DNA of 64,000 bases, taken from the IMG/VR virus record IMGVR_UViG_3300023235_000008, positions 1 through 64,000 of that record, one strand, 5' to 3'. The notes under the pieces are model-generated. The model searched no databases and was not told where the DNA came from. It saw only the letters and a list, made by a program, of their open reading frames with translations. Below, one piece after another: positions 38,851-60,336 of the stretch. Every line of letters starts with the position of its first letter. The first letter of the stretch is position 1. Made by a program: the position numbers and the translations under genes.

Positions 38851-38918
38851 TGCTGATGCTCCTTTAAAGCGTTAGAGTAAGTGGATATTTCAGTATCGTG
38901 ACTTACATCTTTATTTAG
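38851..38918 (-). ncRNA. Structured late-promoter/hairpin leader of the GIY-YIG gene
   Basis: CTAAATA + GTAAGT-cac-GATA-loop-TATC-c-ACTTAC + SD hairpin; covaries with the copy at 60269-60336. Confidence 0.75.
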
Positions 38919-39046
38919 CTATGTTCCCGCCGCAATGCTGCATAGCAACATCAACATGGTGATTTGATAGACTTACCTACTAAATAATGTTATAATAAGA
39001 ACAATGAAAACACATTAACACTTTAACAACACGTAGGAGAGACAAA

Positions 39047-39181
39047 ATGTTTGGTTTAAAGAAGAAGCATCCGCAACAGCGGGATTACGATACGTATCTT
39101 CGCACAGAATTTCGTGAAGAATACAAGCACCACCAGAAGCCATCACCGGCATATCTGTATGGTATGCGTTTTTTCTGGTAG
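39047..39181 (+). CDS. Small hypothetical protein (44 aa)
   Basis: AGGAG SD; MFGLKKKH...DYDTYLRTEFREEY...RFFW. Confidence 0.6.
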   Translation: MFGLKKKHPQQRDYDTYLRTEFREEYKHHQKPSPAYLYGMRFFW

Positions 39182-39192
39182 GGGATATAACT

Positions 39193-39347
39193 ATGAATTT
39201 ATTTAATGGAATCATTTCGCTATTTAAGCGCAAAGAAATGACAGATACGAGTTATATCTTGACTTACTCTAACGCTTTAAAGGAGCCAAGGACATTTATG
39301 ATCTTGAGCATCGTGAGAATGCTTGGAAAAGAGGCAAGAGACTATGA
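39193..39347 (+). pseudogene. Disrupted small ORF (YL..A.DIYDLE.R pattern, DUF3563-like) containing a copy of the HEG leader
   Basis: ELYL and KGAKDIYDLEHRENAW are separated by an 18-nt insert with a stop. Confidence 0.45.
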
Positions 39348-39484
39348 ATATATTTAAAAGAATTGGTGGATACTTCATTAGTGAGGAATTCATTCAAGCC
39401 CGTACACGTACAGCATTGTCACGTGCGGGTATTACAAGAGAACGACTAGAACAACTCAAACAGGAGAGAATTAAGAATGTTTAA
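39344..39484 (+). CDS. Small protein (46 aa), DUF1127-like GITR motif
   Basis: ALSRAGITRERL; ATGA coupling. Confidence 0.5.
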   Translation: MNIFKRIGGYFISEEFIQARTRTALSRAGITRERLEQLKQERIKNV

Positions 39485-39650
39485 ATTAGAAGATATGCAA
39501 AAAGCTTTCACACCCGAAGGTTTCGTAACAGCAATGGAAAAGATGCAGAGCAACTATTTCAGTGCGATTGAACAAGGTCTTGAAGCACAGCGCAAAGCTG
39601 CAAAAGAAGGTCTTATTGCATTCAAGAAGGTATCTGCACAAAGCAAATAA
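39477..39650 (+). CDS. Small amphipathic helical protein (phasin-like, 57 aa)
   Basis: AGGAG SD; F.LEDMQKAFTPE...AIEQGLEAQRKAAKE. Confidence 0.55.
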   Translation: MFKLEDMQKAFTPEGFVTAMEKMQSNYFSAIEQGLEAQRKAAKEGLIAFKKVSAQSK

Positions 39651-39669
39651 GTCTTGACAACACCACATC

Positions 39670-39711
39670 AAAAGCCCTATACTAGTATATAAACTGGTAT
39701 GGGCTTTTTTT
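39670..39711 (+). terminator. Rho-independent terminator overlapping a promoter
   Basis: AAAAGCCCTATACTAG / CTGGTATGGGCTTTT plus a T-run; TTGACA at 39654. Confidence 0.75.
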
Positions 39712-39725
39712 ATGGAGAATACTAA

Positions 39726-40007
39726 ATGAAACTACCTATAAACTATACGAGAATCGGTGCACGCGAGCGTCGTGAAGTCCGTGAAGAATACATTCGCATT
39801 CAAGACGGAAAATGTTGGTGGTGTGAGAACGCACTTACCGATAATCCTACCACTGAGATTATGGATACAGATGTTAATCGTCGGTTATTCCCGCCGAACT
39901 TCTTTAAGCATCCTGTTCACTTACAGCATGATCATGATACTGGTATGACCGAAGGTGCGGTTCATGCCAGATGCAATGCAGTAATGTGGCAATACCACGG
40001 GAAATGA
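39726..40007 (+). CDS. Endonuclease VII-like / HNH-type small protein
   Basis: QDGKCWWC...HLQHDHDTG...GAVHARCN. Confidence 0.8.
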   Translation: MKLPINYTRIGARERREVREEYIRIQDGKCWWCENALTDNPTTEIMDTDVNRRLFPPNFFKHPVHLQHDHDTGMTEGAVHARCNAVMWQYHGK

Positions 40008-40195
40008 ACGACAGGGAAAAGTTTTGGCAGGATTTATCAAAGCCGCCGTTGAATAGACGAGGTTGCCGCAACTGTATTCATTTCGCTTCATCGGGTTTAC
40101 TAAGCGATTGTATGAATCCAGTGGGCATGACAATATGTAGTGGGGGGCGTGACGAGTATTGGGAGTGGAATGGCGAACATTGTTATGGACGATAA
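40004..40195 (+). CDS. KEFW-CxxC cassette-family protein
   Basis: MNDREKFWQDLSKPP...CRNC...C...C...YWEWNG. Confidence 0.8.
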   Translation: MNDREKFWQDLSKPPLNRRGCRNCIHFASSGLLSDCMNPVGMTICSGGRDEYWEWNGEHCYGR

Positions 40196-40314
40196 AGAAA
40201 AGTTTTGGCAGGATTTATGCAAACGCACAGATTTATTGTAAAAAACAGATGGGTCAACGCATAACTACAACATGCGAACCATGTATGTGGGAATGGGATG
40301 GAATAAGGGAATGA
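40185..40314 (+). pseudogene. Deleted/frameshifted KEFW cassette
   Basis: MDDKEKFWQDL..., then out-of-frame YC...CEPCMWEWDGIRE*. Confidence 0.7.
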
Positions 40315-40382
40315 ACATGAAAAAAATAGAAGGTGACAAGTTCTTTTGGGCAACATTAAAAGGGGAATTTGATGAGATATAA
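40311..40382 (+). other. Leader-only mini-ORF (23 aa)
   Basis: MNMKKIEGDKFFWATLKGEFDEI*; ATGA-coupled. Confidence 0.4.
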
Positions 40383-40587
40383 AATAACGACAACATTACG
40401 TGACGGTATTCGTGACAATGCTGGCGTGGCTGTAACCAATGCCCTACACGGTATGGGATTCGATATGCTAAAAAGCACCCGCATCGGTAAGGTATTTTAC
40501 ATTGAAACAGATGATGATATTAACGAGATTGTTAAACACATTGTCAATCCAGTTATGGAGGATTTTACCATTGAAAAACAAGACTAA
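40372..40587 (+). CDS. purS: Phosphoribosylformylglycinamidine synthase subunit PurS
   Basis: TLRDGIRDNAGVAV..AL..MGF...RIGK.F.I......VNPVMEDF. Confidence 0.85.
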   Translation: MRYKITTTLRDGIRDNAGVAVTNALHGMGFDMLKSTRIGKVFYIETDDDINEIVKHIVNPVMEDFTIEKQD

Positions 40588-40807
40588 GAAAGAAAAGTTT
40601 TGGGAAGCATTGCATATGCCACAAAATAAGAACTGTAGTACCTGCATATATGACGGCGATCCTACCTATAACAAAGATCATATGTATTCTGAACCAGATG
40701 GACCCTGCTTTCATCCTACTCGCACCGAAGATGAGGGGTGTTCTTTAGGTAGACCCGCCTCGAATAACTCTTTCCCGTTTTGGAAATGGGATGGGGTATC
40801 GACATAA
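40571..40807 (+). CDS. KEFW-CxxC cassette-family protein (TTG start)
   Basis: KKEKFWEALHMPQ.KNCSTC...C.HP...C...FWKWDG. Confidence 0.75.
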   Translation: MKNKTKKEKFWEALHMPQNKNCSTCIYDGDPTYNKDHMYSEPDGPCFHPTRTEDEGCSLGRPASNNSFPFWKWDGVST

Positions 40808-40812
40808 TAAAA

Positions 40813-40845
40813 CCTTAACAAATGTGTAACAAAACCTTAAATTGC
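40813..40845 (+). promoter_or_regulatory. Putative Pho box upstream of pstS
   Basis: Three 11-bp-phased repeats, CCTTAAC / GTGTAAC / CCTTAAA; TG-N-TATAAT at 40863-71 and TATAAATA at 40851. Confidence 0.6.
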
Positions 40846-40901
40846 AAGTATATAAATATTTGTGATATAATAAGGAATAATCATTTAAAGGAAATCAACA
40901 A

Positions 40902-41906
40902 ATGAAACTAAATCTACTAGCCGTCGCCGCAACGGCATTTTTGCTTGTGGCAACAACTGCTGAAGCACGTGACCAAATTCGCATCGTAGGCAGTTCTACC
41001 GTTTACCCATTTTCAACTACCGTTGCTGAATCATTCGGCAATACAACCTCCTTCAAAACACCAGTCGTCGAATCTACGGGATCAGGCGGCGGCTTGAAAC
41101 TATTTTGCAGTGGTGTTGGAACACAATTCCCAGACATTACGAACGCATCAAGACAAATCAAACCTTCTGAAATCAAACTATGCGCAAAGAACGGCGTGAC
41201 TGATGTAACCGAGGTTTTAGTTGGCTTTGATGGTATTGCTATCGCTAACGCAAAGGGAGCAACACATCTTGACTTAACCGTTCGTGATTTATTCTTGGCT
41301 TTAGCTAAGTTTATTCCTGATGCAAATGGCGAGTTAATCGCTAATCCAAATGAAACATGGAATGACATTGGTATTAACTTACCAGAAATTAAGATTGAAA
41401 TATTAGGACCGCCACCAACGTCAGGTACACGAGATGCGTTCCTTGAATTGGTTATGGAAAAAGGCGCAAAGACATTCCCTTCATTGAAAGAACTTCGCAA
41501 GACAGATAAGAAAAAGTTCAAAGCAGTAGCACATGGTCTACGTGAAGATGGTGCTTATGTAGAAGCTGGCGAGAACGACAACTTGATTGTTCAAAAGCTA
41601 TCGGCTAATAAGAATGCTGTTGGTATCTTTGGATTTAGCTTTCTAGAGAATAACAGTGATAAGGTTCAAGGTTCACACATCAATGGTGTGTTGCCAACAT
41701 TTGAAAACATCTCTGATGGTTCTTATCCAGTGTCTAGGTCATTGTTCTTTTATGTGAAAGAACAGCACGTTGGCAGTATAGCTGGTATTGAAGAATATGT
41801 TAGTGAGTTTATCAGTGAAAAGGCAACGGGTGAATACGGATATCTTTCTGATAAGGGTCTTATCCCGGCACCAGAAGGAACTGTTCGAAAACGAAAAGTT
41901 AAATAA
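40902..41906 (+). CDS. pstS: Phosphate ABC transporter substrate-binding protein
   Basis: Signal peptide; IVGSSTVYPF, ESTGSGGG, GPPPTSGTRDAF, YPVSRSLFFYVK. Confidence 0.95.
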   Translation: MKLNLLAVAATAFLLVATTAEARDQIRIVGSSTVYPFSTTVAESFGNTTSFKTPVVESTGSGGGLKLFCSGVGTQFPDITNASRQIKPSEIKLCAKNGVTDVTEVLVGFDGIAIANAKGATHLDLTVRDLFLALAKFIPDANGELIANPNETWNDIGINLPEIKIEILGPPPTSGTRDAFLELVMEKGAKTFPSLKELRKTDKKKFKAVAHGLREDGAYVEAGENDNLIVQKLSANKNAVGIFGFSFLENNSDKVQGSHINGVLPTFENISDGSYPVSRSLFFYVKEQHVGSIAGIEEYVSEFISEKATGEYGYLSDKGLIPAPEGTVRKRKVK

Positions 41907-41923
41907 TCATATACGATATAAGG

Positions 41924-41962
41924 AAATAGGGGCTTGACAGTCCCTATTTTTTTGCGTATACT
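41924..41962 (+). terminator. Terminator whose loop is the -35 of the next promoter
   Basis: AAATAGGG-GCTTGACAGT-CCCTATTT plus T-run; TTGACA(41934)-N17-TATACT(41957). Confidence 0.75.
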
Positions 41963-41974
41963 CCATAATAATAA

Positions 41975-42295
41975 ATGAAATGGAGATTTAGAATGTTTGT
42001 AATTAAAGATATAATGAGCGGGAAATACTTGATTACAAGTAACGCTAATACGGCTGATCCAAAAAATATTGAATTAGCAAAAAGATACGAAAATGAAAAA
42101 GGTGCTGAAAAGGCTAGAAAATATCACCAAGATCGTGCCGATAAAAATGTGGCGAGTGGAAAGAAGTTGTATGAGCTATATGTTCGTGACGGCGACCAAT
42201 CCAACGCCGATTGCGTTAAAAATTGGAAAGATCGGGAACAGGAATGGAAAGTGGTTGAAGTCCAATCCATTACAGTAGAAGTGAGGACTGTGTAA
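41975..42295 (+). CDS. Hypothetical protein
   Basis: ORF downstream of an early promoter. Confidence 0.65.
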   Translation: MKWRFRMFVIKDIMSGKYLITSNANTADPKNIELAKRYENEKGAEKARKYHQDRADKNVASGKKLYELYVRDGDQSNADCVKNWKDREQEWKVVEVQSITVEVRTV

Positions 42296-42483
42296 TATGC
42301 TAGGAATAGCTTGTGTAGCAGGACTATTGATTTTCAATACGACAGCATTTAATCCAGATACAATATTTGCCATTAAACTTGATAAGGGAGACATAAGAGT
42401 TAGTTGTGTATGGCACAAAAAAACTTCTTGACATTCATACCGATTCTGCTATTATGTATAAGTAATCAATAGGGAGAACCCAA

Positions 42484-42708
42484 ATGAAAGTTACCGTTTT
42501 TATCACCGCCGCACAGAACGCAAAGTTCTTTGACAATGCATTGAACACCAGCGAAGGTTTCGCTGAGTTGTCCCGAGTTGTTCGCAATGTTGTGACCAAT
42601 GAAGACGGTGCACTTATCGCCGAAGCAACTGTCAACGGTCGCAATGTTCCAGTGATTTCAAACTACGGCGACACCGAGTTCTACGACCTTAACGCAGAAG
42701 CGATGTAA
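42484..42708 (+). CDS. Hypothetical early protein
   Basis: TTGACA promoter at about 42428, GGGAG SD. Confidence 0.7.
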   Translation: MKVTVFITAAQNAKFFDNALNTSEGFAELSRVVRNVVTNEDGALIAEATVNGRNVPVISNYGDTEFYDLNAEAM

Positions 42709-43460
42709 TGAAAATACGCTTACTCAGTGACGTTCATCTCGAATTTGACAATACTCCAATGGAGTTTTGTGACGCACTTTACAACCCAAACTGGAATGGG
42801 GCAGATGTGCTTGTTCTGGCGGGGGATATCACTACTAAAAGCCGTGTGCAATGGATTGTGGAAATGTCTAAACATTTTCCGCACGTTGTCTATGTATACG
42901 GCAATCATGAGTTTTATAAGAGTAACTTTGATAGCGTGAAACGTCATACTGTCGAAAGTCTACCAAGTAATGTGCATGTCCTTGATGATAGTTCAGTGAT
43001 GCTGGATGGTGTAAATTTCCACGGCTGCACATTGTGGTCTGATTTTAATAAAGGCGATCCACTTACGTATCACGCTGCACAATCGTCGATGAATGATTAC
43101 AGGCAAATCCGTGACGAGAAGTATTCGATTATTAAACCACAGGGTATTCACACCAGACATAACGTGTCAAAGATGTTCCTTGCTGATAACGTTAAGGAAG
43201 GCGACGTGGTTGTAACGCATCACGCACCAACGTATAAGAGTATTCACGCAAGATTCCGAGGCGATAAGTTGTCTGGATGTTATGCCAGTGATTTGTCTGA
43301 CCTTATATTGGACACGAAACCGGCATTATTCTGCCACGGTCACGTTCACGATTCATTTGATTATATGGTCGGCGACACACGTGTGGTATGTAATCCGAGA
43401 GGTTACAAAGGGAGCGAACTTAATCCTAACTTTGACGAGGATTTGACAGTAGAGATATGA
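42708..43460 (+). CDS. Calcineurin-like metallophosphoesterase
   Basis: SDVHLE, LAGDI, YGNHE, CTLW, VTHHAP, CHGHVH, NPRGY. Confidence 0.93.
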   Translation: MKIRLLSDVHLEFDNTPMEFCDALYNPNWNGADVLVLAGDITTKSRVQWIVEMSKHFPHVVYVYGNHEFYKSNFDSVKRHTVESLPSNVHVLDDSSVMLDGVNFHGCTLWSDFNKGDPLTYHAAQSSMNDYRQIRDEKYSIIKPQGIHTRHNVSKMFLADNVKEGDVVVTHHAPTYKSIHARFRGDKLSGCYASDLSDLILDTKPALFCHGHVHDSFDYMVGDTRVVCNPRGYKGSELNPNFDEDLTVEI

Positions 43461-43810
43461 ACGGCGAACTACGATATTTATCAGACTCAAATATATTCCG
43501 GTTGGATTACTATGAGTATGTCGCATCGGATCGTGAAGAAAGAATACAGCACGTTCGTGAAGATTTGGAGTTCATTTTTCGCTACGCATCGACCGCAGAC
43601 ATAGAAATGTTTGGGGTTGACAAAGCCGAAGTATATAATCGTCGTGTAACGATTTCTAATATGGACGGGTTTGAAAAAATACTGGTTGCATATCTAACAG
43701 AATGTGCTGATGTTCAAATCGATGATATTGATTTCGTAATAGATGACGAAAAATCCCGAATGTTCTTTGACCTATCGGCTGACTATAAAAAAGTGGAGTA
43801 TTGGAAATGA
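43457..43810 (+). CDS. Hypothetical protein
   Basis: ATGA-coupled ORF. Confidence 0.65.
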   Translation: MNGELRYLSDSNIFRLDYYEYVASDREERIQHVREDLEFIFRYASTADIEMFGVDKAEVYNRRVTISNMDGFEKILVAYLTECADVQIDDIDFVIDDEKSRMFFDLSADYKKVEYWK

Positions 43811-44172
43811 AAACTATTGTTGTAACCATTACAATGGCTGCAATCGTTTTAACGGGTTGTGTGCGTGAGTTATCAAGTTACGAGCGACAACTTCAGTGGG
43901 AAGAAAACCAACCAAAATCGTGGGCTGGCAAGACTGGTCAAAAGGGTAGGGACTTTCAGATGTGGCAATTCCGTAAACGTTGCGAAACGGCATACAGTTA
44001 TGAATGCCTTGAACTTGATATTCATGGTGACCGCAGCGTACGTGAGGCACCGCCACCACCAGCACGAACAGGCAACAAGCGCATCTACAGCATTTGTGAT
44101 GGTGGCGTATGTGTCACTGAAAAGATTTGTTATGATTTGGTTAATGGAACAGAGGAATGTGTCCGTGAGTAA
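43807..44172 (+). CDS. Putative lipoprotein
   Basis: Signal peptide with lipobox VLTGC; Cys-rich C-terminus. Confidence 0.65.
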   Translation: MKTIVVTITMAAIVLTGCVRELSSYERQLQWEENQPKSWAGKTGQKGRDFQMWQFRKRCETAYSYECLELDIHGDRSVREAPPPPARTGNKRIYSICDGGVCVTEKICYDLVNGTEECVRE

Positions 44173-44554
44173 AAAATCAAAAGCGTGGGAATCTTCGTAT
44201 GATCCCGATAAACAAAACAAGCGTGATGTTCCCAGCTGGTGGTTGGGGGTGGATCAGCGAACGATAGTTAATGACTGGGAGCCTAACATCATAACGGCAG
44301 ATTATGACGAGTTTATAGAAATCCTTGAATACTGTAAGAAGAATAAGATTGGTATTAAAAACTGGCAATATGCGAGGATTGGCGGCAGACAAGGTGACAA
44401 GTTTATAGAACTCCTTGAAAAATGTAAGAAGAATAAGATTGGTATTAGAAAATGGCAATATCCGATGCTTGATGGCGGCAGACAAGGTTTTATCATTCGA
44501 TTGAAAAAACAACGTGACCTTTTTGCTGTAAATCTTACACTAAGACAATCATAA
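44165..44554 (+). CDS. Hypothetical protein with an internal 29-30 aa duplication
   Basis: GTG start; D.FIE.LE.CKKNKIGI..WQY....GGRQG occurs twice. Confidence 0.6.
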   Translation: MSKKSKAWESSYDPDKQNKRDVPSWWLGVDQRTIVNDWEPNIITADYDEFIEILEYCKKNKIGIKNWQYARIGGRQGDKFIELLEKCKKNKIGIRKWQYPMLDGGRQGFIIRLKKQRDLFAVNLTLRQS

Positions 44555-44627
44555 TAATGTTGACTAACCCTTCCTAATGTAGTATAATAGTTCATTGAGT
44601 TAAACCAACCTTTATAGGAGAAATAGT

Positions 44628-44798
44628 ATGGATGCTTTTGAAAAAGAACTACACGACGCTGCCGACGAGGCTATCTTCGGACTTCAACTAGACCACGATG
44701 CTGCTGTTCGGTTTGTTAGAAACAATGTTGACAACACCGAAGACTATCAAGCAGAAGCCGCAGTGAACCGTTTATTGACTGGCACATCACCACTATGA
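44628..44798 (+). CDS. Small early protein (56 aa)
   Basis: TTGACT-TATAAT promoter, AGGAG SD; MDAFEKELHD... Confidence 0.65.
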   Translation: MDAFEKELHDAADEAIFGLQLDHDAAVRFVRNNVDNTEDYQAEAAVNRLLTGTSPL

Positions 44799-45346
44799 AA
44801 GAGTTAACACATCTTGGGGGGATCACTGTATCCCCCCAACAAGCCCACGTATTCTATTATGTTAGACCAGACTTTGAAAAAGGTCCGTGGGTAGCGGGCG
44901 GTGCCATTAGGCAACTACTACAATGCAGAACAGTTAAGTCGGATTTTGATGTATATTGTTCTAGTCAAGAGCAATCAAAAATCATTGCGGATCGACTAAC
45001 CGACGCTGGGTTCAGCGTAGCCTTTGATTCCGAGAACGCAGTCACATACCGTGCGGATGATATTGATGTCCAACTTATCAAGAAGCAGTGGTTTCAAAAT
45101 CCACTTGATGTAGTTAATGACTTTGATTTCGCACAAGCCCAACTTATTTCAGATGGCTATTCGGCGTGGGGCAATCCTGATTGGAACGAAGACGACATTG
45201 ACATTGTGAGCTACCGTCCGAAATCGATTCTGAAACGCCTTGTGAAATATTATGCATACGGCTACAAGATTAAACAGGAAACACTTACAAAGCTTTCCGC
45301 AGATTCTGATTTACAATATGATTTTCGCAATGATCCGGGGTATTAA
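44795..45346 (+). CDS. Nucleotidyltransferase (poly(A)-polymerase/CCA head-like, stand-alone)
   Basis: WVAGGAIR....KSDFDVY; VQLI...FDFAQ; KRLVKY..YGY. Confidence 0.75.
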   Translation: MKELTHLGGITVSPQQAHVFYYVRPDFEKGPWVAGGAIRQLLQCRTVKSDFDVYCSSQEQSKIIADRLTDAGFSVAFDSENAVTYRADDIDVQLIKKQWFQNPLDVVNDFDFAQAQLISDGYSAWGNPDWNEDDIDIVSYRPKSILKRLVKYYAYGYKIKQETLTKLSADSDLQYDFRNDPGY

Positions 45347-45348
45347 TT

Positions 45349-46592: not shown

Positions 46593-46611
46593 CTTTTAAA
46601 GGAAACACACC

Positions 46612-53110: not shown

Positions 53111-53128
53111 TTATTTATCCTTTCCAAA

Positions 53129-53214
53129 AATGATTGACATTATTGATTTAATAGATTACACTTCATTTAACAATGATTGACATCATTGATTTAATAGATT
53201 ACACTTCATTTAAC
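53129..53214 (+). repeat. 43-bp tandem duplication of a promoter
   Basis: Two copies (1 mismatch), each containing TTGACA-N17-TACACT. Confidence 0.85.
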
Positions 53215-53239
53215 AATTAGGCACATAGGAACCTCGTAA

Positions 53240-53389
53240 ATGTTAGAAGATATCGATCTTGATCTTAAAGAAGTAGAAAAGTTTCTACAAGATGGCGGCG
53301 ATATGGAAGATTTAATTATCTCTGTATTTATTGAATATGGATATGACCCAGAGACAGCCTTTGAAATGGCTAAATCTTATTTTTTATAG
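53240..53389 (+). CDS. Small acidic protein (49 aa)
   Basis: AGGA SD; MLEDIDLDLKEVEKFL... Confidence 0.5.
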   Translation: MLEDIDLDLKEVEKFLQDGGDMEDLIISVFIEYGYDPETAFEMAKSYFL

Positions 53390-53958: not shown

Positions 53959-54301
53959 TAAAATGTCTCTTTCTGTGTGATTGAATTTATAAACTATTAT
54001 ACCATGCGCACAGGTGGTGATTTCAATATAAAAGATTATATAAACATATTGACTATTATTACGAGTATTTGATATAATACATATTTATGGGTTGACAATC
54101 TACTGATTTGTGGGTATAGTTACATCATAATGAAAAGGAAGAGAAAATGCAGATTTATATGGACACCAGCGACAACATTAGCGCCAGCGAAATGGCAGCA
54201 TTTATGTCCGAAATCAACTCTATTTTGGTCAACCAAAACCCCAAGCGTGAAGAAGCCGCCCGTATTATTGAAATGAACGGTCAGGCAGCAGAAGCTAATA
54301 A

Positions 54302-54511
54302 ATGATTTGGTCACTTGTGCTAATATCTGTTTTAACCGGTAATCCTGTCGTAGACTTGAAACCACTTGGTAAGTTTTCTGTATATGGGCATTGTGACCGT
54401 ATGATGCAGAAAATGAATGCGAAACGTGATATATCCGTCAGTTATTTTGACTGCCGCTTGCAGTTACCAAATGGAATCCGTGAAAATAAAGAAAAAATCG
54501 AGGCAAGATAA
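54302..54511 (+). CDS. Small secreted hypothetical protein
   Basis: Hydrophobic N-terminus; Cys pair. Confidence 0.55.
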   Translation: MIWSLVLISVLTGNPVVDLKPLGKFSVYGHCDRMMQKMNAKRDISVSYFDCRLQLPNGIRENKEKIEAR

Positions 54512-54771
54512 ATACAATATGATCGACTAGAATACTACTATTTGCGAGGTACAACAGCCCATTCAAAGATGCTGTTGACCTCTTTTTTTGTGCGGAGATG
54601 AAAAATGGATAGTTTAGAATATATCGAAATGACAGGCTGTGAGCGTATTTTACATCGTGTATCAGCAACAAGCGTTAACACACCGTGGGCAGCAGATGCC
54701 GACAAAAACTTAGAGATTGTCAAACAGTTTTTGGCACATCGTTATCAAGAATTAAAGGATAAAACTTAACA

Positions 54772-54993
54772 TTGGCTAAAGAAGAATTGCTAGAATTAGA
54801 GGGTGAAATCATTGACGTTTTACCACAAAGTATGTTTAAAATCAAAGTGGATAATTCGGAACACATAGTTCTGGCATATCTTAGCGGAAAGATGCGCAAG
54901 TTCAAAATCAAGTTGGTATTGGGCGATAAGGTTAAAATCGAAGTGTCACCATATGACGTTTCAAAAGGTCGAGTAACTTATAGGCATAAATGA
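54772..54993 (+). CDS. infA: Translation initiation factor IF-1
   Basis: [10 protein letters not shown]...LP..MF.....[12 protein letters not shown]....GDKV..E.SPYD..KGR.TYR. Confidence 0.95.
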
Positions 54994-55226
54994 TGGACAA
55001 AGACAAAGATAAAGAACAGTTTTGGGACGATTTAAAAGCACCGTTTGCACCAGAAAACTGCGGGTGTGTTAGTTGCGCCCGTCCAAGTGCAGGTATGATG
55101 ATGTCGCCCAACTTTCTGTATGCATGTGAAATCTGCGGCAATAAACGGTGCCCGCATCACACGCATCATGCACGTGCATGTACTAACAGTAATGAACCGG
55201 GACAAAAAGGAAGTATTTACAAATGA
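54990..55226 (+). CDS. KEFW leader fused to a different Cys/His-rich domain
   Basis: [14 protein letters not shown], then [12 protein letters not shown]...[12 protein letters not shown]. Confidence 0.75.
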
Positions 55227-55546
55227 TTACAATAACCGAAAATGCTAAAAAGCAGTTTACGACAATGATGGAAGACAATGGATTTGAAGCATTCATTTTC
55301 GGTGCATCTGGTGGTGGATGTGCTGGTTTTAACTATCTTTTAAAAGAAACTAAGTTAGACGATGCCAATGAAGGTGATGAAGTAATCGACTTCGATGGTG
55401 TTAAAATCGTTCTTGATAAGGCTAGCGTATTCGCTGTCGCTGGTACAGAGATTGACTATAAGATTGATGTGATGGGTTCACGCTTTGCGTTTTCAAATCC
55501 TATCGCAACATCATCTTGTGGATGTGCAACGTCATTTAGTATCTGA
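55223..55546 (+). CDS. A-type Fe-S cluster carrier (IscA/ErpA, HesB family)
   Basis: GGGCAGFNY, GTEIDY, F.NP.ATSSCGCATSF. Confidence 0.93.
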   Translation: MITITENAKKQFTTMMEDNGFEAFIFGASGGGCAGFNYLLKETKLDDANEGDEVIDFDGVKIVLDKASVFAVAGTEIDYKIDVMGSRFAFSNPIATSSCGCATSFSI

Positions 55547-56530
55547 CGCTGGTTCCATTAATCCTAGCTGCATATCGATATGCATTACAACTTCATCTCG
55601 CATAATCATTAGCTTGAAATCTTCGTATGGTAACTTGTATTGCAATACGTCGAACAAGTCATCTACGCTTTCGATATTTGCACCATCGGCTTCAATAATA
55701 ACATCGCCTATTTTAACGCCAGCCGTTTCAGCAGCTGAACTAGGTTCAACCATATTGACAAACACCCTACCCAGCGCAGGATTATAGTCAAGTCCTGTGC
55801 CTATCCTTGGTCTATCGATACGTCCATTCTCAATCAACTTCTTAATGACATACAGCGCCAACTTGCTATCCACACTCATGCTCAACCCGTCGCTACCGCC
55901 GTCTTTCGATAGGATTAATGTATTGATAGCGATAACATTACCTGCCATATCCATTAATGGTCCACCGCTATTTCCTTGGTTAATAGACACGTCGCTTTGA
56001 ACTACTGTCTGCCAACCGCTTGATATACGACGATGAATATGACTAACTACGCCTTTTGACACTGTATACATTAATCCACGTGGATGACCCATCGCCCATA
56101 CTTCTTGTCCAGCACGTAGTTTATCACTATCGCCCCATTTCATTGGTATGGTTTTTGGCATACCCTTTTCAACACGCAATACTGCAATATCAGATAGTGC
56201 ATCAGTGCCAATCAATTTTGCTATATGTCGTTTTGTGGAATTTTCAAAACTTATTGTAATGACTTTAGCTTTATCAATCACGTGGTTATTTGTGATGATA
56301 TATTGCCCGTCAATGACGAATCCTGTGCCTACACTGACCGGTTCTCGGTTTGGTTTGTTTTTATTTAGGTATTTGTCCAACGCTGAACCGGGTATTACGC
56401 CTTCTCTCTTGGATTCAACCAAGACGATTGAACTTCTTACATTTTCAACCGTATCCAAAAATTCCTCGTTGCTATGTGCAAATGACTGGAATGGTAGCAA
56501 TAAAATTGCCATTATGATTAATATACGCAT
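55532..56530 (-). CDS. HtrA/DegP-family serine protease with PDZ domain
   Basis: Signal peptide; GTGFV, ITNNHV, DIAVL, INQGNSGGPL; C-terminal PDZ. Confidence 0.93.
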   Translation of the reverse strand: MRILIIMAILLLPFQSFAHSNEEFLDTVENVRSSIVLVESKREGVIPGSALDKYLNKNKPNREPVSVGTGFVIDGQYIITNNHVIDKAKVITISFENSTKRHIAKLIGTDALSDIAVLRVEKGMPKTIPMKWGDSDKLRAGQEVWAMGHPRGLMYTVSKGVVSHIHRRISSGWQTVVQSDVSINQGNSGGPLMDMAGNVIAINTLILSKDGGSDGLSMSVDSKLALYVIKKLIENGRIDRPRIGTGLDYNPALGRVFVNMVEPSSAAETAGVKIGDVIIEADGANIESVDDLFDVLQYKLPYEDFKLMIMRDEVVMHIDMQLGLMEPASDTK

Positions 56531-56578
56531 ATTATATTTATCACGGAAAAAGATAAATACTAGAAACAGGAGTCTCAC

Positions 56579-57106
56579 ATGGCTAAACAAACTATTGGTA
56601 TCGGCGCAGCAGCAAATGACGGAACGGGCGATGATCTTCGTGTTGCGTTTGATAAAGTAAACGACAACTTTTCGGAAATCTATACCGAGTTAGGCGGCAC
56701 AACGCTTAGTAACCTCAACTTTATAGGTAATACTATTTCTTCAGAAGATTCAAATGGAGCTATTATTCTTGATCCAAACGGAACGGGCAATGTGACTATT
56801 GCCAGCGGTAGTTTGGTTGGTAATGTGACTGGTGCCCTAACTGGTAATGCGGATACGGCAACAACAGCGGCAACAGTAACAACTGCCGCTCAACCAACAA
56901 TCACATCCGTGGGAACATTATCCTCACTTAATATCGGCGCAGACAGATATAATATTTCAACCACATACACCCCAGCATCATCAGTGGGAAGTCCCGGCGA
57001 CACAACAGGCGACGTTGCAGTAGACAATAGTTTCTTCTATTATTGCACGGGTGTATATGATGGTTCGACCGTGATTTGGGTTCGTTCTACGCTGTCCGCT
57101 TTCTAA
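56579..57106 (+). CDS. Virion structural protein (tail/baseplate-associated)
   Basis: MAKQTIGIG..ANDGTGD.LR.AF.K.N.NF.E.Y; C-terminal G..GD.A.D....YYCT..YDG...IW; late promoter. Confidence 0.8.
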   Translation: MAKQTIGIGAAANDGTGDDLRVAFDKVNDNFSEIYTELGGTTLSNLNFIGNTISSEDSNGAIILDPNGTGNVTIASGSLVGNVTGALTGNADTATTAATVTTAAQPTITSVGTLSSLNIGADRYNISTTYTPASSVGSPGDTTGDVAVDNSFFYYCTGVYDGSTVIWVRSTLSAF

Positions 57107-57139
57107 GTAAAACTGATAAATACCCTAAAGGGGATATAA

Positions 57140-59566
57140 ATGGGAATTCCAGTATGGGTAACACCAGCAGGTGATTTAGGAAAAATTCAGGAAGCTGAGT
57201 TTTATGACTTTCAGGTTATTGTAGAAGACCCTGAAGCCCCTAGCGACGAATTGCAACCAAGATTTAACTTACAATCAGGAACAATGCCAACTGGTCTACG
57301 TATTACACGAGAAGGTCTGATGGAAGGGCGTCCAAGTTGTGAAATCTTTATTGCAGGTGTTCCTACAAACGTTGGTCAAAATGTAACATCTAGATTTGTC
57401 CTACGTGCGACAAGTTATGATGGTATCGTGAGTGACCGCACATTTGAATTGACTGTTGTGGGACAAGATGACCCCCTTATTCTTACAGCTGACGGAGAAC
57501 TTGGTATATACCGTGATGGGCAATATGTAAATGAACAGATTGTTGCCACCGATGCTGATCCCGACGATACACTTACTTTTAGAATTTTAGATGGTGAATT
57601 ACCACCGGGCGTAACGATTAGTAATGATGGTTATATTACTGGATACATCGAACCTACGCCATTGCTTACGGGAACACCGGGGTTTGATGCCAACGCATTT
57701 GATGTGAATAGCTTTGATTTCCGCACGATTGCGCAAAATAAAAACTTTCAATTCACAGTTGCAGTGACAGATGGTAAATCAACAGTTGCTGGAAATTATA
57801 CAATATACGTGTATGCTGGCAATACATTTACCGCCGACAACGCTGATCTTACCGCAGATATGGCAGGATTTCCGTTTACTACTGACCAAAATTCGCTTCG
57901 TCCACCAGTATTATTAACGGCTGAAGCAGATATTGGAATAGTCACACACGACAACTATTTCGCATACCAATTCACTGGAATGGATTTCGATGGCGATCCA
58001 ATCGAATATAGTCTAGGTGTAGGTGGTGGCGAAGGTTACGATAACGATTTAGGATTCGACGGCGAAATAAACGGATTTGATGTTGGCGATCTTGAACTGC
58101 CGCCGGGTCTTGTTTTGGATTCAACAACAGGTTGGTTATATGGCTATATACCAAATCTAGCAGCAACGCAAACCGAATATACATTCACCGTGCGTGTTCT
58201 TAAAGCAAATGATTCAACATATAAAAGCGATTTTAAATTCTTCACGATGACAATTGTTGGCGATATTCGTTCGATAGTTAACTGGATTACGCCCGAAGAT
58301 ATAGGCACCATTGCCGTGGGTGAAATCAGCACTATTTCTATAGAAGCTACCAATACCTTAAATAAAAATTTACAGTATCGCTTGAAATCAAGATCAAATA
58401 GTAAGTTGCCACAAGGATTAAACCTTAACTTGGATGGACTTATTGTCGGACGACCAGCATTTAAAACGTTTATGATAGATGGCGGAACAACATCATTTGA
58501 TTCCGAGAGCTTCGTTATTAATGAAACCACGTTTGAACGCACATATACATTTACAGTAGAAGCTTTTGATTCCGATGGCGATGTATCTGCTTTTAAAACG
58601 TTTACCATAGTTATTGATCCCGGCGATTTTATTCCGTATGAAAATCTGTGGGCAAAAGCATATCCAAAGGTAGAGCAACGTGACATATGGTCTTCTCTTA
58701 TTAACTCACCCGATGACTTTCCACCAGATTTGATCTATCGCCAGAATGATTATTATTATGGAAAACAGCAGGATATAAGAATCATTCTTAGTACGGGATT
58801 AAACCCTAGTCTTCCTGCTGAAATGATATCGGCAATCGCTAAAAACCATTACAATAAACGTGTTGCATTTGGAGAAATTAAAAAGGCACGAGCAGTTCGT
58901 GACGGCGTGGTTCAGTATGAAGTTGTATATCTTGATGTATTGGATACCGAAGCAAACTCATTAAAACAATCAACAGGATTGAGTATTGATTTTTATGAAA
59001 ACCATAACGATATATGGAGTAATCCTGCGTTAGTATCTGACACAAACCTTACAGGAGACTACGATGGCATTGACGCTGGTGATAGTGATCAACACGTATT
59101 CTATCCAAACTCCTTTGAGAATATGAACCAACAACTATTGGATAACGTAGGGCAACTTGCACTGACTAGTCTTCCACTATGGATGCGTTCTAAACAAGAA
59201 AATGGAAGCATACTTGGATTCACTCCTGCCGTTGTTATTGCATACGTTACACCGGGTTCGGCAGATGAAATCATTTTCAATATTAAACGTCGCACCGATA
59301 TTGACTTGAAAGATATTGAATTTATTATTGACAGATATATCTGGGATAATGATATGACTGTGAACTTTGATATCGCTAATGATGAGTGGGGAACAGAAAC
59401 AGAGACTACGTTTGATCTAAGTGTCAATGCTGCGGATGAAACCTTCTTCGATGGCGGGTCTACACGATTTATAACCGATTCATTCTTGTATAAATCCAGT
59501 CGTGATGATGGCGATTCTTTCTTGAAATTCCCATTGACAAATATTGATAGTAAAATACTAGGTTAA
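57140..59566 (+). CDS. Virion structural protein with putative Ig/cadherin-like repeats
   Basis: Repeated G.LP.G...GLI.G and FTV.V.D modules; late promoter GATAAATA. Confidence 0.85.
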   Translation: MGIPVWVTPAGDLGKIQEAEFYDFQVIVEDPEAPSDELQPRFNLQSGTMPTGLRITREGLMEGRPSCEIFIAGVPTNVGQNVTSRFVLRATSYDGIVSDRTFELTVVGQDDPLILTADGELGIYRDGQYVNEQIVATDADPDDTLTFRILDGELPPGVTISNDGYITGYIEPTPLLTGTPGFDANAFDVNSFDFRTIAQNKNFQFTVAVTDGKSTVAGNYTIYVYAGNTFTADNADLTADMAGFPFTTDQNSLRPPVLLTAEADIGIVTHDNYFAYQFTGMDFDGDPIEYSLGVGGGEGYDNDLGFDGEINGFDVGDLELPPGLVLDSTTGWLYGYIPNLAATQTEYTFTVRVLKANDSTYKSDFKFFTMTIVGDIRSIVNWITPEDIGTIAVGEISTISIEATNTLNKNLQYRLKSRSNSKLPQGLNLNLDGLIVGRPAFKTFMIDGGTTSFDSESFVINETTFERTYTFTVEAFDSDGDVSAFKTFTIVIDPGDFIPYENLWAKAYPKVEQRDIWSSLINSPDDFPPDLIYRQNDYYYGKQQDIRIILSTGLNPSLPAEMISAIAKNHYNKRVAFGEIKKARAVRDGVVQYEVVYLDVLDTEANSLKQSTGLSIDFYENHNDIWSNPALVSDTNLTGDYDGIDAGDSDQHVFYPNSFENMNQQLLDNVGQLALTSLPLWMRSKQENGSILGFTPAVVIAYVTPGSADEIIFNIKRRTDIDLKDIEFIIDRYIWDNDMTVNFDIANDEWGTETETTFDLSVNAADETFFDGGSTRFITDSFLYKSSRDDGDSFLKFPLTNIDSKILG

Positions 59567-60237
59567 ATGGATGCTAACCATTTCGTAGCGACAGGATTAT
59601 GCACTGGCGTTTCAGTCCATTGTTTGATAGGCTTCCACATAGTATCGGTAAGCTCTTGACTACGTTCTGGTGTCATCAACGATGAATTATTAACACTGTA
59701 AAAATCCTCATTGCCGAACAACGTCTGGAAGGTTGCTTTGTTTTTCTGGGTGCTAGTCCACGCATCAGTTACAATATCTACCGGAACACGACGATTGCGC
59801 TGGTCATTTCGATCCAATGCTACCTGAAGGTCAGTATTAACAAAAATCATCTTTGTTTCATAGCCCAACGCTTCTAGACGATCTTTAATCTGCGTCGATT
59901 TAGTGATATCGGCAGCTGTGCTATCAATAATCAACCCAAGGCGACCTTCAATGTAGTTACCAAGGCGATTTGCAGTGATGTCTTGTGCTTGCTTACGAAC
60001 AGCATCCCGTTTTTCTGTTTCTTCAGGAGGCATACGTAAACTTAGATTGTTCTTACGCATAAGATATTCAAATACATCATCGCTATTAACTGTTTTAAAT
60101 CCCATTCCCTGTGTGGTTTGGCGGGCAATCATACCTTTTCCTGAACCACCACCGCCAGCAAGGAATATAGCCTTGAAGATGCTCGGATCGTGTGGTCCTT
60201 CGGTTATAATAGTTTCAATGATTTGATTAATTCGCAT
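59563..60237 (-). CDS. P-loop kinase (zeta-toxin/AAA_33-like)
   Basis: KAIFLAGGGGSGK, VNSDD.FE, GLIIDST, LGYETKMIFVNT...R.VP. Confidence 0.85.
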   Translation of the reverse strand: MRINQIIETIITEGPHDPSIFKAIFLAGGGGSGKGMIARQTTQGMGFKTVNSDDVFEYLMRKNNLSLRMPPEETEKRDAVRKQAQDITANRLGNYIEGRLGLIIDSTAADITKSTQIKDRLEALGYETKMIFVNTDLQVALDRNDQRNRRVPVDIVTDAWTSTQKNKATFQTLFGNEDFYSVNNSSLMTPERSQELTDTMWKPIKQWTETPVHNPVATKWLASI

Positions 60238-60268
60238 AAGTGTTTCCTTATTTGAAGTATTTATCAAC

Positions 60269-60336
60269 ATAAATAGAATGTAAGCCACGATGCGACAACA
60301 TCCGCTTACTCTAATACTGAAAAGGAGTATCAGCAA
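60269..60336 (+). ncRNA. Structured late-promoter/hairpin leader of the HNH gene
   Basis: ATAAATA + GTAAGC-cac-GATG-loop-CATC-c-GCTTAC + TACT/AGTA SD hairpin; paralog of 38851-38918. Confidence 0.75.

What the first reader, a model, noticed from the sequence alone, without database searches (positions are those of the whole stretch)
38851..60336. A covarying ~68-nt structured leader shared by two unrelated homing-endonuclease genes
Seen: upstream of GIY-YIG (minus strand, 38918-38851): TAAATAaagatGTAAGT cac GATA ctgaaa TATC c ACTTAC tctaa cGCT ttaaagg AGC atcagca ATG. Upstream of HNH (60269-60336): TAAATAgaatGTAAGC cac GATG cgacaa CATC c GCTTAC tctaa tACT gaaaagg AGT atcagcaa ATG. There are three compensatory base-pair swaps, identical 3+1 internal loops and an SD-covering hairpin. 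Established: T4 endonucleases such as I-TevI are delayed by late promoters and RBS-sequestering hairpins. Inference: a portable expression module or end-of-element RNA/DNA structure that pairs with different nuclease families. It could also be a recognition or guide element.
Basis: partly seen in the sequence, partly recalled or inferred. Interest (0 to 1): 0.66.

Follow-up and report, generated by a model that had tools for sequence, protein, structure and literature searches.

The report
Antisense-folding module heading phage homing endonucleases
The two look-alike "leaders" are real copies of a widespread ~85-bp cassette at the start of many unrelated homing-endonuclease genes in uncultured T4-like phages. 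Its conserved fold forms on the strand opposite the endonuclease gene, so it is most likely a small antisense RNA framed by two facing late promoters, not an mRNA leader hairpin.

Summary
Both copies exist as described, with three compensatory swaps, and neither the window nor related loci match any Rfam family. Pattern and covariance-model searches of IMG/VR found at least 188 distinct copies, almost all directly before GIY-YIG, HNH or NUMOD3 homing-endonuclease genes. The interpretation needs revising. All non-Watson-Crick pairs in the helices are A.C on the endonuclease strand, which means G.U on the opposite strand. The opposite strand is more stable in 172 of 185 members, and RNAalifold gives it 19 pairs. 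These include a helix that joins the conserved TCTAA and TCAGC boxes through G.U pairs. The fold is framed by two facing T4-type late-promoter cores (TAAATA), each followed by 5 nt and a G that begins a helix. The inner box lies in the first codons of the endonuclease gene, in all three reading frames. The genome encodes a gp55-type late sigma factor. Most of these endonuclease genes lie antisense to their neighbours. Best reading: a portable bidirectional late-promoter cassette whose outward transcript is a ~65-75-nt structured antisense RNA covering the endonuclease 5' UTR and Shine-Dalgarno sequence. No RNA data were available, so transcription and repression are inferred.

The parts
38835..38842 (+). 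Copy A, inner (antisense) late-promoter-like box, 8/8 match to TATAAATA on the plus strand. It lies inside codons 3-5 of the GIY-YIG ORF.
   Evidence: Sequence and R2 alignment. In the family the box is TATTTA on the HEG strand in 64/94 ORFs, found in all three frames. In copy A it sits 9 nt before the G of GCUG instead of the usual 5.
38852..38906 (+). Copy A, folded core read on the plus strand (antisense to the HEG). Hairpin P3as is 38853-38875 with the anti-Shine-Dalgarno CCUU in its loop. One A follows. Hairpin P1/P2 is 38877-38906.
   Evidence: R2 hit of 84 bits, E 8e-17. Family covariation and RNAalifold structure. Fold of this strand.
38907..38919 (+). Copy A, U-rich tail after the 3' hairpin on the plus strand. 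It is the complement of the outer late-promoter box (CTAAATA, 38912-38918 on the minus strand) that faces the GIY-YIG gene. The predicted mRNA start is G at 38906.
   Evidence: Sequence. Spacing statistics. T4 late-promoter geometry, -13 to -6 (PMC1524935).
38395..38850 (-). GIY-YIG homing-endonuclease gene, 151 aa.
   Evidence: Pfam PF01541. PHROG homing-endonuclease families. Homologues at 58% and 44% identity carry the same module.
60268..60275 (+). Copy B, outer late-promoter-like box (CATAAATA) facing the HNH-like ORF.
   Evidence: Sequence and alignment.
60280..60334 (-). Copy B, folded core read on the minus strand (antisense to the HNH-like ORF). The predicted antisense start is G at 60334. 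P3as comes first, then P1/P2, which ends at 60280. A U-rich tail runs 60279-60268.
   Evidence: R2 hit of 81 bits, E 5e-16. Fold. Family structure.
60340..60347 (-). Copy B, inner (antisense) late-promoter-like box (GGTAAATA on the minus strand) in codons 2-3 (Y-L) of the HNH-like ORF. It lies exactly 5 nt before the G of GCUG.
   Evidence: Sequence. R2 alignment. Spacing.
60337..60627 (+). 96-aa ORF with an HNH-type motif.
   Evidence: Translation. No Pfam hit at E<=0.01. Family members with the same MYL start carry HNH or GIY-type domains.
39262..39286 (+). Third, partial copy. It is 25 nt identical to the P1 3' arm, TCTAA and P3 of copy A, inverted relative to it and 380 bp away. It has no P1 5' arm, no CAGCA box and no endonuclease gene. 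Probably a recombination scar or the remnant of a lost cassette.
   Evidence: blastn within the genome. Sequence. The same in three near-identical contigs.
38968..38996 (+). Sigma-70-like promoter (10/12, TG extension) on the strand opposite the GIY-YIG gene, just beyond the module and before the small ORF 39047-39181.
   Evidence: In the family such promoters (>=10/12) follow the module on the antisense strand in 31/108 cases, against 5-6/108 in controls.
60258..60264 (-). The neighbouring zeta-toxin-like kinase gene (59563-60237, minus strand) has its own ATAAATA box 20 nt before its ATG, immediately beyond the tail of copy B.
   Evidence: Sequence. Pfam PF06414.

Best explanation
The element is a portable, roughly 85-bp bidirectional late-promoter cassette fused to the 5' end of free-standing homing-endonuclease genes (HEGs) in uncultured T4-like phages.

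The outer TAAATA box drives the HEG mRNA. That mRNA would start at the first base of helix P1 and carries the Shine-Dalgarno sequence and ATG supplied by the cassette.

The inner TAAATA box lies on the opposite strand inside the first 2-5 codons of the HEG. It would drive an outward transcript starting at the G of GCUGAU. This transcript folds into two hairpins. The 5' hairpin has 8 bp and presents the anti-Shine-Dalgarno CCUU in its loop. The 3' hairpin has 11 bp with two bulged Gs and is followed by a U-rich tract. This is the layout of a small cis-antisense RNA of about 65-75 nt, complementary to the whole HEG 5' UTR.

Inferred mechanism: the antisense RNA pairs with the HEG leader, possibly through loop-loop contact at the Shine-Dalgarno sequence. 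This would limit translation and/or trigger decay. The result would be to damp or time nuclease expression, perhaps across the several HEGs in one phage that share the cassette.

Shown here: the family, its covariation, the strand on which it folds, the two boxes and their spacing, and the HEG association and orientation. Inferred: that both boxes fire, that the outward RNA ends in the U tract, and that it represses the HEG.
For: 1. Family and covariation. There are 188 distinct copies. On the antisense alignment of 133 members, 99.3% of cells pair, against 82.8% in shuffles and 25-51% in slid controls. The covariation score is 0.534 against 0.203.

2. Strand of the fold. On the HEG strand, P1+P2 show 1032 Watson-Crick pairs, 31 A.C and 1 G.U; P3 shows 39 A.C against 3 G.U. 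The antisense strand is more stable in 172 of 185 members, mean -16.2 against -11.5 kcal/mol. RNAalifold on the antisense alignment finds 19 pairs. These include CUGAU paired with RUUAG, with an invariant G.U and one pair that varies A-U 103, G.U 24, G-C 6, and a G-Y pair (G-C 111, G.U 22). This accounts for the conserved TCTAA, TCAGC and CRC boxes.

3. Facing promoters. In a sample collected without requiring either box, TAAATA lay upstream in 67 and TATTTA downstream in 64 of about 73 family members. The downstream box occurs in all three reading frames (40/15/9) across unrelated protein families, giving N-termini MxIY, MYL or MIFI. Each box is followed by 5 nt and then a G that begins a helix (120/179 and 119/170). 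This matches the T4 late-promoter position of -13 to -6 (PMC1524935).

4. The promoter type is used in this phage. It encodes a gp55-type late sigma factor (phrog_12791, E 3e-75). ATAAATA is 61% intergenic in a genome that is 17% intergenic. It sits 17-31 nt before many ATGs, or 4-7 nt before others.

5. The inner box is kept equally often whether the upstream neighbour is divergent or co-oriented (59-65% exact). Its role is therefore tied to the HEG and not to the neighbour.

6. Specificity. Downstream ORFs are HEGs. The element is virtually absent from cellular genomes.
Against: No transcript data: no RNA run was listed for this phage.

The 3' hairpin is AU-rich, and the U tract starts 2 nt after it. 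The U tract is also the complement of the outer promoter box, so it cannot be judged as a terminator on its own.

In 12 of 70 divergent cases the neighbour's ATG lies only 6-19 nt beyond the cassette. There, outward transcription must read through, at least partly.

Both promoters are of the late class, so mRNA and antisense RNA would be made at the same time. The regulatory logic (damping, threshold or cross-talk) is therefore unclear.

The helix formed by the invariant boxes cannot be proven by covariation where nothing varies.

A strand-biased mutation spectrum could contribute to the A.C excess, although it would not explain why mismatches are tolerated if the sense fold mattered.
Confidence: 0.5

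Rival explanations
1. The fold is in the HEG mRNA leader. A 5' hairpin plus a hairpin covering the Shine-Dalgarno sequence would delay or limit translation, as in I-TevI, segB or mobE.
For: A late-promoter box, the hairpins, the Shine-Dalgarno sequence and the ATG lie in the right order. The sense strand also folds, at -9 to -14 kcal/mol with z -2 to -3.2. The mechanism is established for T4 and Aeh1 HEGs (PMC2988022). Dassa et al. 2009 read similar metagenomic hairpins this way (PMC2677866).
Against: Non-canonical pairs on the sense strand are A.C rather than G.U, about 70 against 4. The sense fold is weaker in 172 of 185 members. The promoter box is outside the hairpins, so late transcripts keep the whole fold, unlike I-TevI and mobE. 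The sense Shine-Dalgarno hairpin is 3-4 bp. The model does not explain the TATTTA box held in three reading frames. Most of these HEGs are antisense to their neighbours, so early read-through cannot translate them anyway. R2 finds nothing in T4 or Aeh1.
Confidence: 0.1
2. Outward promoter with a structured leader. The inner box exists to transcribe the neighbouring phage gene that the HEG insertion cut off from its own promoter. The fold would be a stabilising 5' leader of that mRNA.
For: 70 of 100 upstream neighbours are divergent and start 6-90 nt beyond the cassette. In 12 there is no room for another promoter. T4 HEGs are known to embed promoters for flanking genes (PMC2988022).
Against: The inner box is equally conserved when the upstream neighbour is co-oriented (18 exact plus 8 variant of 30) and when the divergent gene is far away. 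31 of 108 neighbours have their own sigma-70-like promoter, and others have their own ATAAATA box, between the cassette and the ATG. A leader role does not need the anti-Shine-Dalgarno loop or the conserved bulges.
Confidence: 0.17
3. PeSL-like insulator. On the early-gene strand the 3' hairpin plus U tract terminates or processes transcripts that run antisense through the HEG. The next early promoter follows it.
For: The fold is on the strand of the surrounding genes. In 48 of 77 cases both neighbours oppose the HEG. The hairpin is followed by a U-rich tail and then, more often than in controls, by TTGACA-N17-TATAAT (31/108 against 5-6/108). Composite terminator/promoter cassettes that shuffle genes are known in T4-like phages (PMC2839356, PMC4122927).
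Against: A terminator needs neither the 5' hairpin, nor the invariant GCUGAU and UUAGA boxes, nor a TAAATA box in the HEG's first codons at a fixed 5-nt spacing. The stem is AU-rich and bulged. In 12 of 70 cases the neighbour's ATG follows within 6-19 nt, so an efficient terminator would silence it.
Confidence: 0.13
4. DNA-level element. A hairpin or cruciform forms on the HEG template strand as single-stranded DNA. It could serve as a recombination hotspot, a replication or priming signal, a hairpin promoter, or a nuclease recognition or guide element.
For: G.T wobbles are also tolerated in DNA hairpins. The cassette clearly recombines: it heads unrelated ORFs, and a 25-nt inverted partial copy exists.
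Against: A conserved, strand-specific two-hairpin fold bounded exactly by two predicted transcription starts, with an anti-Shine-Dalgarno loop, fits an RNA. Recombination needs homology, not structure. Different nuclease families would not share one recognition site. No repeat or guide-like variable segment is present.
Confidence: 0.05

Closest known systems
Late-promoter plus RBS-sequestering hairpin control of T-even homing endonucleases (I-TevI, I-TevII, I-TevIII, segB, Aeh1 mobE; Gott 1988, Gibb & Edgell 2007/2009, review PMC2988022)
   Same: A T4-type late promoter (TATAAATA core) sits directly upstream of a phage HEG. RNA structure lies next to the Shine-Dalgarno sequence. The purpose is to restrain a potentially harmful nuclease.
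   Different: In the known cases the promoter lies inside the hairpin and the fold is on the mRNA of co-oriented read-through transcripts. Here the box lies 5 nt upstream of the whole fold, the pairing is selected on the opposite strand, a second facing box lies in the first codons, and most HEGs are antisense to their neighbours. The covariance model finds nothing in T4 or Aeh1.
Conserved 5' hairpins of free-standing HEGs in metagenomic 'fractured genes' (Dassa et al. 2009, PMC2677866)
   Same: Metagenomic phage-like loci with GIY-YIG and other HEG families. Hairpins occur in 15 of 16 5' UTRs, ten of them with TATAAATA. Two conserved motifs are complementary in the stem. This may be the same cassette or a relative of it.
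   Different: It was read there as a sense-strand translational hairpin. No strand test, antisense box or family-wide model was reported. The sequences are in figures and supplements that are not held here, so identity could not be checked.
CfrI antisense RNA of cyanophage S-PM2 (Millard et al. 2010; summarised in PMC2984593)
   Same: An experimentally detected antisense RNA in a T4-like phage that overlaps a free-standing HEG and is co-expressed with it.
   Different: CfrI is about 225 nt, links the HEG to psbA, and is not known to be a shared structured cassette. The model R2 finds no match in S-PM2.
IS10 RNA-OUT / RNA-IN (known from the literature, recalled from memory and not checked here)
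   Same: Face-to-face promoters sit at the 5' end of a mobile element's nuclease or transposase gene. The outward RNA is a short stable stem-loop complementary to the mRNA 5' end and ribosome-binding site, and it can act in trans on other copies.
   Different: A different element class (an insertion sequence in bacteria), no sequence relation, sigma-70 promoters, and a single hairpin. Here the promoters are phage late promoters and the RNA has two hairpins.
PeSL composite terminator/early-promoter cassettes of T4-like phages (PMC2839356, PMC4122927)
   Same: Short conserved regulatory cassettes that flank variable genes and act as points of modular exchange. On the early strand a stem-loop is followed by an early promoter.
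   Different: PeSLs are early-promoter units not tied to HEGs. This cassette carries late-promoter cores, supplies the Shine-Dalgarno sequence, ATG and first codons of the HEG, and has a two-hairpin fold with invariant junction bases.

Membership tests
T-even HEG control by late promoter + RBS-sequestering mRNA hairpin (I-TevI / mobE type) | T4-type late promoter (TATAAATA core) immediately upstream of the HEG, in a phage with a gp55-type sigma factor | tested here: met
   TAAATA lies upstream in 67 of about 73 members sampled without requiring it. A gp55 homologue is present in the genome. ATAAATA is enriched in intergenic DNA.
T-even HEG control by late promoter + RBS-sequestering mRNA hairpin (I-TevI / mobE type) | The late promoter lies inside the inhibitory hairpin, so late transcripts lack its 5' arm | tested here: not met
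   The box ends 5 nt before the first paired base in 120 of 179 members. All helices lie downstream of the predicted +1.
T-even HEG control by late promoter + RBS-sequestering mRNA hairpin (I-TevI / mobE type) | A stable hairpin on the mRNA strand sequesters the Shine-Dalgarno sequence | tested here: not met
   The sense P3 is 3-4 bp. The mismatches are A.C on the sense strand. The antisense fold is more stable in 172 of 185 members.
T-even HEG control by late promoter + RBS-sequestering mRNA hairpin (I-TevI / mobE type) | The HEG is co-oriented within early or middle polycistronic units | tested here: not met
   Both neighbours are on the opposite strand in 48 of 77 cases and co-oriented in 13 of 77.
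cis-antisense RNA control of a mobile element's nuclease gene (IS10 RNA-OUT type; CfrI) | An outward-facing promoter inside the 5' end of the ORF | tested here: met
   Motif level only. The TATTTA box occurs in three frames (64/94 exact, plus one-base variants), with 5-nt spacing to the conserved G in 119 of 170. Promoter activity was not measured.
cis-antisense RNA control of a mobile element's nuclease gene (IS10 RNA-OUT type; CfrI) | The antisense strand forms a conserved, stable stem-loop RNA complementary to the mRNA 5' UTR and ribosome-binding site | tested here: met
   19 pairs, 99.3% of cells paired, covariation above both shuffled and slid controls. The anti-Shine-Dalgarno sequence lies in the 5' hairpin loop.
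cis-antisense RNA control of a mobile element's nuclease gene (IS10 RNA-OUT type; CfrI) | The antisense transcript is detected and represses the gene | not testable with these tools
   No RNA run was listed for this sequence. No cultured phage carries the element.
PeSL composite terminator / early-promoter cassettes | A stem-loop followed by a sigma-70 early promoter on the early-gene strand | tested here: inconclusive
   A sigma-70-like match of at least 10/12 lies within 110 nt beyond the hairpin in 31 of 108 cases, against 5-6 of 108 in controls. It is absent in most. Terminator activity is unknown.
PeSL composite terminator / early-promoter cassettes | Sequence relation to the described PeSLs | not tested
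   PeSL sequences were not retrieved. R2 found nothing significant in T4 (E 0.98).
Any Rfam 15 family | Score at or above the gathering threshold, or any match with E<=1 | tested here: not met
   No match in the window at gathering thresholds. No match at E<=1 in four loci carrying six copies.
Conserved HEG 5' hairpins of Dassa et al. 2009 | The same conserved stem motifs | not testable with these tools
   The motifs are only in a figure and a supplement that are not held.

The most novel reading that the evidence does not exclude
The cassette encodes a dedicated small antisense RNA that unrelated homing endonucleases share by recombination. Because the copies in one phage are about 80% alike and keep invariant loop and junction bases, the RNA would act in cis and in trans. 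That would be a copy-number-sensing, IS10-like 'multicopy inhibition' system for selfish nucleases in phage genomes. The inner promoter would also fix the first four codons of every gene that joins the club.
Probability: 0.3. Interest if true: 0.85.

Novelty: new variant of a known kind. Interest (0 to 1): 0.72.

Why it matters
Free-standing homing endonucleases are the most common selfish genes in large phages. How they are kept harmless has been worked out for only a handful of T4 and Aeh1 genes. It appears to work differently from the textbook mRNA hairpin. The selected fold is on the opposite strand, between two facing late promoters, and it constrains the first codons of the proteins at the DNA level. 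If the outward RNA is real, it would be the first conserved family of antisense regulators of homing endonucleases, a new RNA family for Rfam, and a clear case of promoter sequence dictating protein N-termini across unrelated genes. It also offers a compact marker for finding mobile nuclease cassettes and late promoters in uncultured T4-like phages, and a ready-made bidirectional late-expression module for phage engineering.

Tried and rejected
1. My first pattern had the wrong loop length and found nothing. It was corrected.

2. Near and distant blastn of the region against cultured phages found no relatives of the cassette.

3. Very specific patterns retrieved only three near-identical contigs of the same phage.

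5. I tested whether the two TAAATA/TATTTA boxes are arms of one long helix. The bases flanking them do not covary, so an extended helix is not supported. The frequent TACTTA variant would still be a G.U on the antisense strand, so a short 6-bp pairing cannot be excluded.

6. T4 gp55 used as a direct protein query found nothing in the genome. A PHROG profile scan then found the homologue.

7. The search for an empty, HEG-less allele next to the kinase gene found only a distant fusion protein and was uninformative. Cassette boundaries therefore rest on where conservation stops across loci.

8. I checked whether co-oriented loci are 'fractured genes' as in Dassa 2009. The flanking ORFs showed no obvious split gene, and this was not pursued.

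9. No RNA sequencing run was listed.

11. The simple terminator scan does not flag the 3' hairpin, which has too few G-C pairs for its rule.

Full report
**Observation**

- Copy A lies on the minus strand at 38851-38918, before a 151-aa GIY-YIG ORF at 38395-38850 (Pfam PF01541).
- Copy B lies on the plus strand at 60269-60336, before a 96-aa ORF at 60337-60627. This ORF shows an HNH-type motif by eye but has no Pfam hit.
- The two copies align from a TAAATA box to the ATG. They fold alike and differ by one compensatory pair in each of three helices.
- A 35-nt pattern over the two inner helices matches only these two places in the 230-kb virus record that holds the window, and never in shuffled sequence.
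- No Rfam family matches, either at gathering thresholds in the window or at E<=1 in four loci that carry six copies.

**A large family**

GIY-YIG homologues at 58% and 44% identity (L012, L013) carry the same element, with further compensatory changes and a TATAAATA or CATAAATA box.

I then scanned IMG/VR with a pattern that fixes only unpaired bases (TAAATA, CRCG, TCC, TCTAR) and requires no pairing.
- 108 of 111 distinct hits have at least 4 of 6 Watson-Crick pairs in helix P1.
- The same pattern in 596 Gb of bacterial and archaeal genomes gave hits with 0-3 pairs. There was one real copy, on a 148-kb contig binned with a Haliscomenobacter MAG.

A second scan was anchored on the 3' half and required neither promoter box. 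In total 188 distinct copies were collected. Several contigs carry two or three copies. No cultured phage carries the element: blastn found none, and model R2 finds nothing in T4, Aeh1, S-PM2 or Pelagibacter phage Mosig, although it recovers two copies in a positive-control contig. The window's own genome has only the two full copies.

**What follows the element**

Of 91 complete downstream ORFs:
- 31 match NUMOD3, 21 match HNH-type Pfam families, 5 match GIY-YIG and 2 match the I-TevI DNA-binding domain.
- Most match PHROG homing-endonuclease families, for example phrog_314 in 53 and phrog_655 in 28.

**On which strand does it fold?**

- On the HEG strand, P1+P2 contain 1032 Watson-Crick pairs, 31 A.C, 1 G.U and 3 others. 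The inner four pairs of P3 contain 39 A.C against 3 G.U.
- The tool count on the sense alignment shows P1 95.2% paired, with no one-sided changes at all.
- An A.C on one strand is a G.U on the other. On an alignment of the opposite strand (A6, 133 members), P1 is 99.9% paired and the whole structure 99.3%. Shuffles give 82.8% and slid partners 25-51%.
- RNAfold finds the opposite strand more stable in 172 of 185 members, with means of -16.2 and -11.5 kcal/mol.

RNAalifold on A6 independently predicts 19 pairs.
- The 5' hairpin has its outer half made of the invariant boxes. CUGAU, the complement of the TCAGC box, pairs with RUUAG, the complement of TCTAA. This half includes an invariant G.U and one pair that varies A-U 103, G.U 24, G-C 6, with no unpaired cell.
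- After a single A comes the 3' hairpin. It consists of P1, one G-Y pair (G-C 111, G.U 22) between two bulged Gs, and P2.

The boxes that looked like conserved single strands on the mRNA are therefore helices on the other strand.

**Two facing late-promoter cores**

- The outer TAAATA box, which faces the HEG, is present in 67 of about 73 members collected without requiring it.
- A second box, TATTTA on the HEG strand and so TAAATA on the other, lies in the first codons. It is exact in 64 of 94 ORFs, and most of the rest differ by one base (TACTTA or TATATA).
- This inner box occurs in all three reading frames (40/15/9). It produces N-termini MxIY, MYL or MIFI on proteins that are otherwise unrelated. 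That is a DNA-level constraint and not a protein one.
- The bases flanking the two boxes do not covary, so they are not simply the arms of a long helix.
- Each box is followed by 5 nt and then a conserved G: the first base of P1 in 120 of 179, and the G of GCUGAU in 119 of 170.
- The T4 late promoter occupies -13 to -6 (PMC1524935). Both predicted starts therefore fall exactly at the two edges of the folded core.

**Is this promoter type used in this phage?**

- The genome is T4-like. It encodes a baseplate wedge and hub and a gp46-like nuclease subunit.
- It encodes a late sigma factor of the gp55 type (phrog_12791, E 3e-75).
- ATAAATA is 61% intergenic in a genome that is 17% intergenic. It lies 17-31 nt before many ATGs.
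- About 14 genes have the box only 4-7 nt before the ATG. This is consistent with a transcription start 5-6 nt after the box.

**Context**

- In 48 of 77 cases both neighbours lie on the strand opposite the HEG, and most genes of those loci do too. This is the reverse of the T4 rule (PMC2988022).
- 70 of 100 upstream neighbours are divergent and start 6-90 nt beyond the cassette.
- On that strand a sigma-70-like promoter (at least 10/12) follows the cassette in 31 of 108 cases, against 5-6 of 108 in controls. The window has one at 38968-38996.
- The cassettes therefore sit mostly in early-gene arrays, pointing the other way.
- The inner box is kept equally often whether the upstream neighbour is divergent and near, divergent and far, or co-oriented (59-65% exact).

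**Interpretation**

The best-supported reading is a portable bidirectional late-promoter cassette.
- The outward transcript would begin with G followed by an 8-bp hairpin that shows the anti-Shine-Dalgarno CCUU in its loop.
- It would continue into an 11-bp bulged hairpin and a U-rich tail.
- It would be complementary to the entire HEG leader. This is the layout of a cis-antisense small RNA, comparable to IS10 RNA-OUT (recalled from memory).
- An antisense RNA over a phage HEG has a precedent in CfrI of S-PM2 (PMC2984593).
- Pairing with the leader would limit translation or stability of the nuclease mRNA.

The fold, its strand, the boxes and the spacing are shown. Firing of the inner box, termination in the U tract and repression are inferred.

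Weak points:
- No RNA data were available.
- The terminator is atypical, and its U tract is also the complement of the outer box.
- In 12 of 70 cases the neighbouring gene starts within 6-19 nt, so read-through must occur there.
- Both promoters belong to the same temporal class.

**Rivals**

- The sense-leader model is disfavoured by the wobble asymmetry, the energies, the position of the promoter and the unexplained inner box.
- An outward promoter serving the neighbouring gene is disfavoured and by the neighbours' own promoters, but it may be a secondary benefit.
- A PeSL-like terminator or insulator (PMC2839356, PMC4122927) explains the 3' hairpin and the context, but not the 5' hairpin, the invariant boxes or the inner promoter.
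- A DNA-level hairpin cannot be excluded, but nothing requires it.

**Prior work**

Dassa et al. 2009 noted hairpins with TATAAATA and two complementary conserved motifs upstream of free-standing GIY-YIG and Vsr-like HEGs in ocean and lake metagenomes, and read them as translational hairpins (PMC2677866). This may be the same cassette. Their sequences are not held here, so I could not test it.

New here are the size of the family, the strand of the fold, the facing promoter in the coding region, and the antisense orientation of the genes. I rate the finding a new variant of a known kind.

**Third partial copy**

A 25-nt stretch at 39262-39286 is identical to the P1 3' arm, TCTAA and P3 of copy A, inverted and 380 bp away. 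It has no endonuclease gene. It fits a recombination scar or a decayed cassette, and it shows that the module is an active point of exchange.

**Limits of the work**

- No alternative genetic code was used.
- No reads were laid.
- Gene orientation rests on simple ORF calls from my own scripts.

Noticed in passing
G000 genome 205021-206847 (+), outside the window (L310:1721-3544): The gp55-type late sigma factor is 608 aa instead of about 185. PHROG matches cover residues 1-191 and 514-598. The middle gives a weak Intein_splicing hit (E 0.004, below the cutoff). It is probably an intein-interrupted late sigma factor. A 551-aa HNH homing endonuclease gene lies next to it on the other strand.
   Followed up: partly
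G000 genome-wide; in the window e.g. before 13344, 37336-38295(-), 50077, 55532-56530(-): About 14 genes have ATAAATA only 4-7 nt before their ATG, with no room for a Shine-Dalgarno sequence. Their late mRNAs would be leaderless or nearly so.
   Followed up: partly
window 37336-38295 (-) and 40902-41906 (+): The phage carries an SbmA/BacA-like inner-membrane transporter gene (Pfam E 1e-110) directly downstream of the GIY-YIG gene, and a PstS-like phosphate-binding protein gene. The PstS-like stretch is 70% identical in DNA to Pelagibacter phage Mosig. Both are unusual auxiliary genes.
   Followed up: no
G000 genome 86476-88128 (+) (L304:2576-4225): This thymidylate synthase ORF of 550 aa has HNH-endonuclease matches at residues 157-382 ahead of the ThyA domain. 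It is either an in-frame nuclease insertion or a fusion.
   Followed up: no
G000 genome 156956-170059 (-): A single ORF of about 4367 aa lies next to the T4-like baseplate wedge gene. It was not characterised.
   Followed up: no
L396 (contig of a MAG labelled Haliscomenobacter sp. EUL_031, 148 kb), 490-535: This is the only true family member among 120 pattern hits in cellular genome bins. The contig is probably a mis-binned phage genome, or a weak hint at a Bacteroidota host.
   Followed up: no
family loci, e.g. L099, L141, L150, L190: In a sub-family the ATG lies upstream of the CAGCA box (N-terminus MTSN..IY). The CAGCA box and its spacing to TATTTA are still kept. The box is therefore a nucleic-acid signal that does not depend on where translation starts.
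   Followed up: partly
window 59563-60237 (-): The gene divergent from the HNH cassette encodes a zeta-toxin-like/AAA_33 kinase-fold protein. In a distant relative (L321) the same domain is the C-terminal part of a protein of at least 584 aa.
   Followed up: partly
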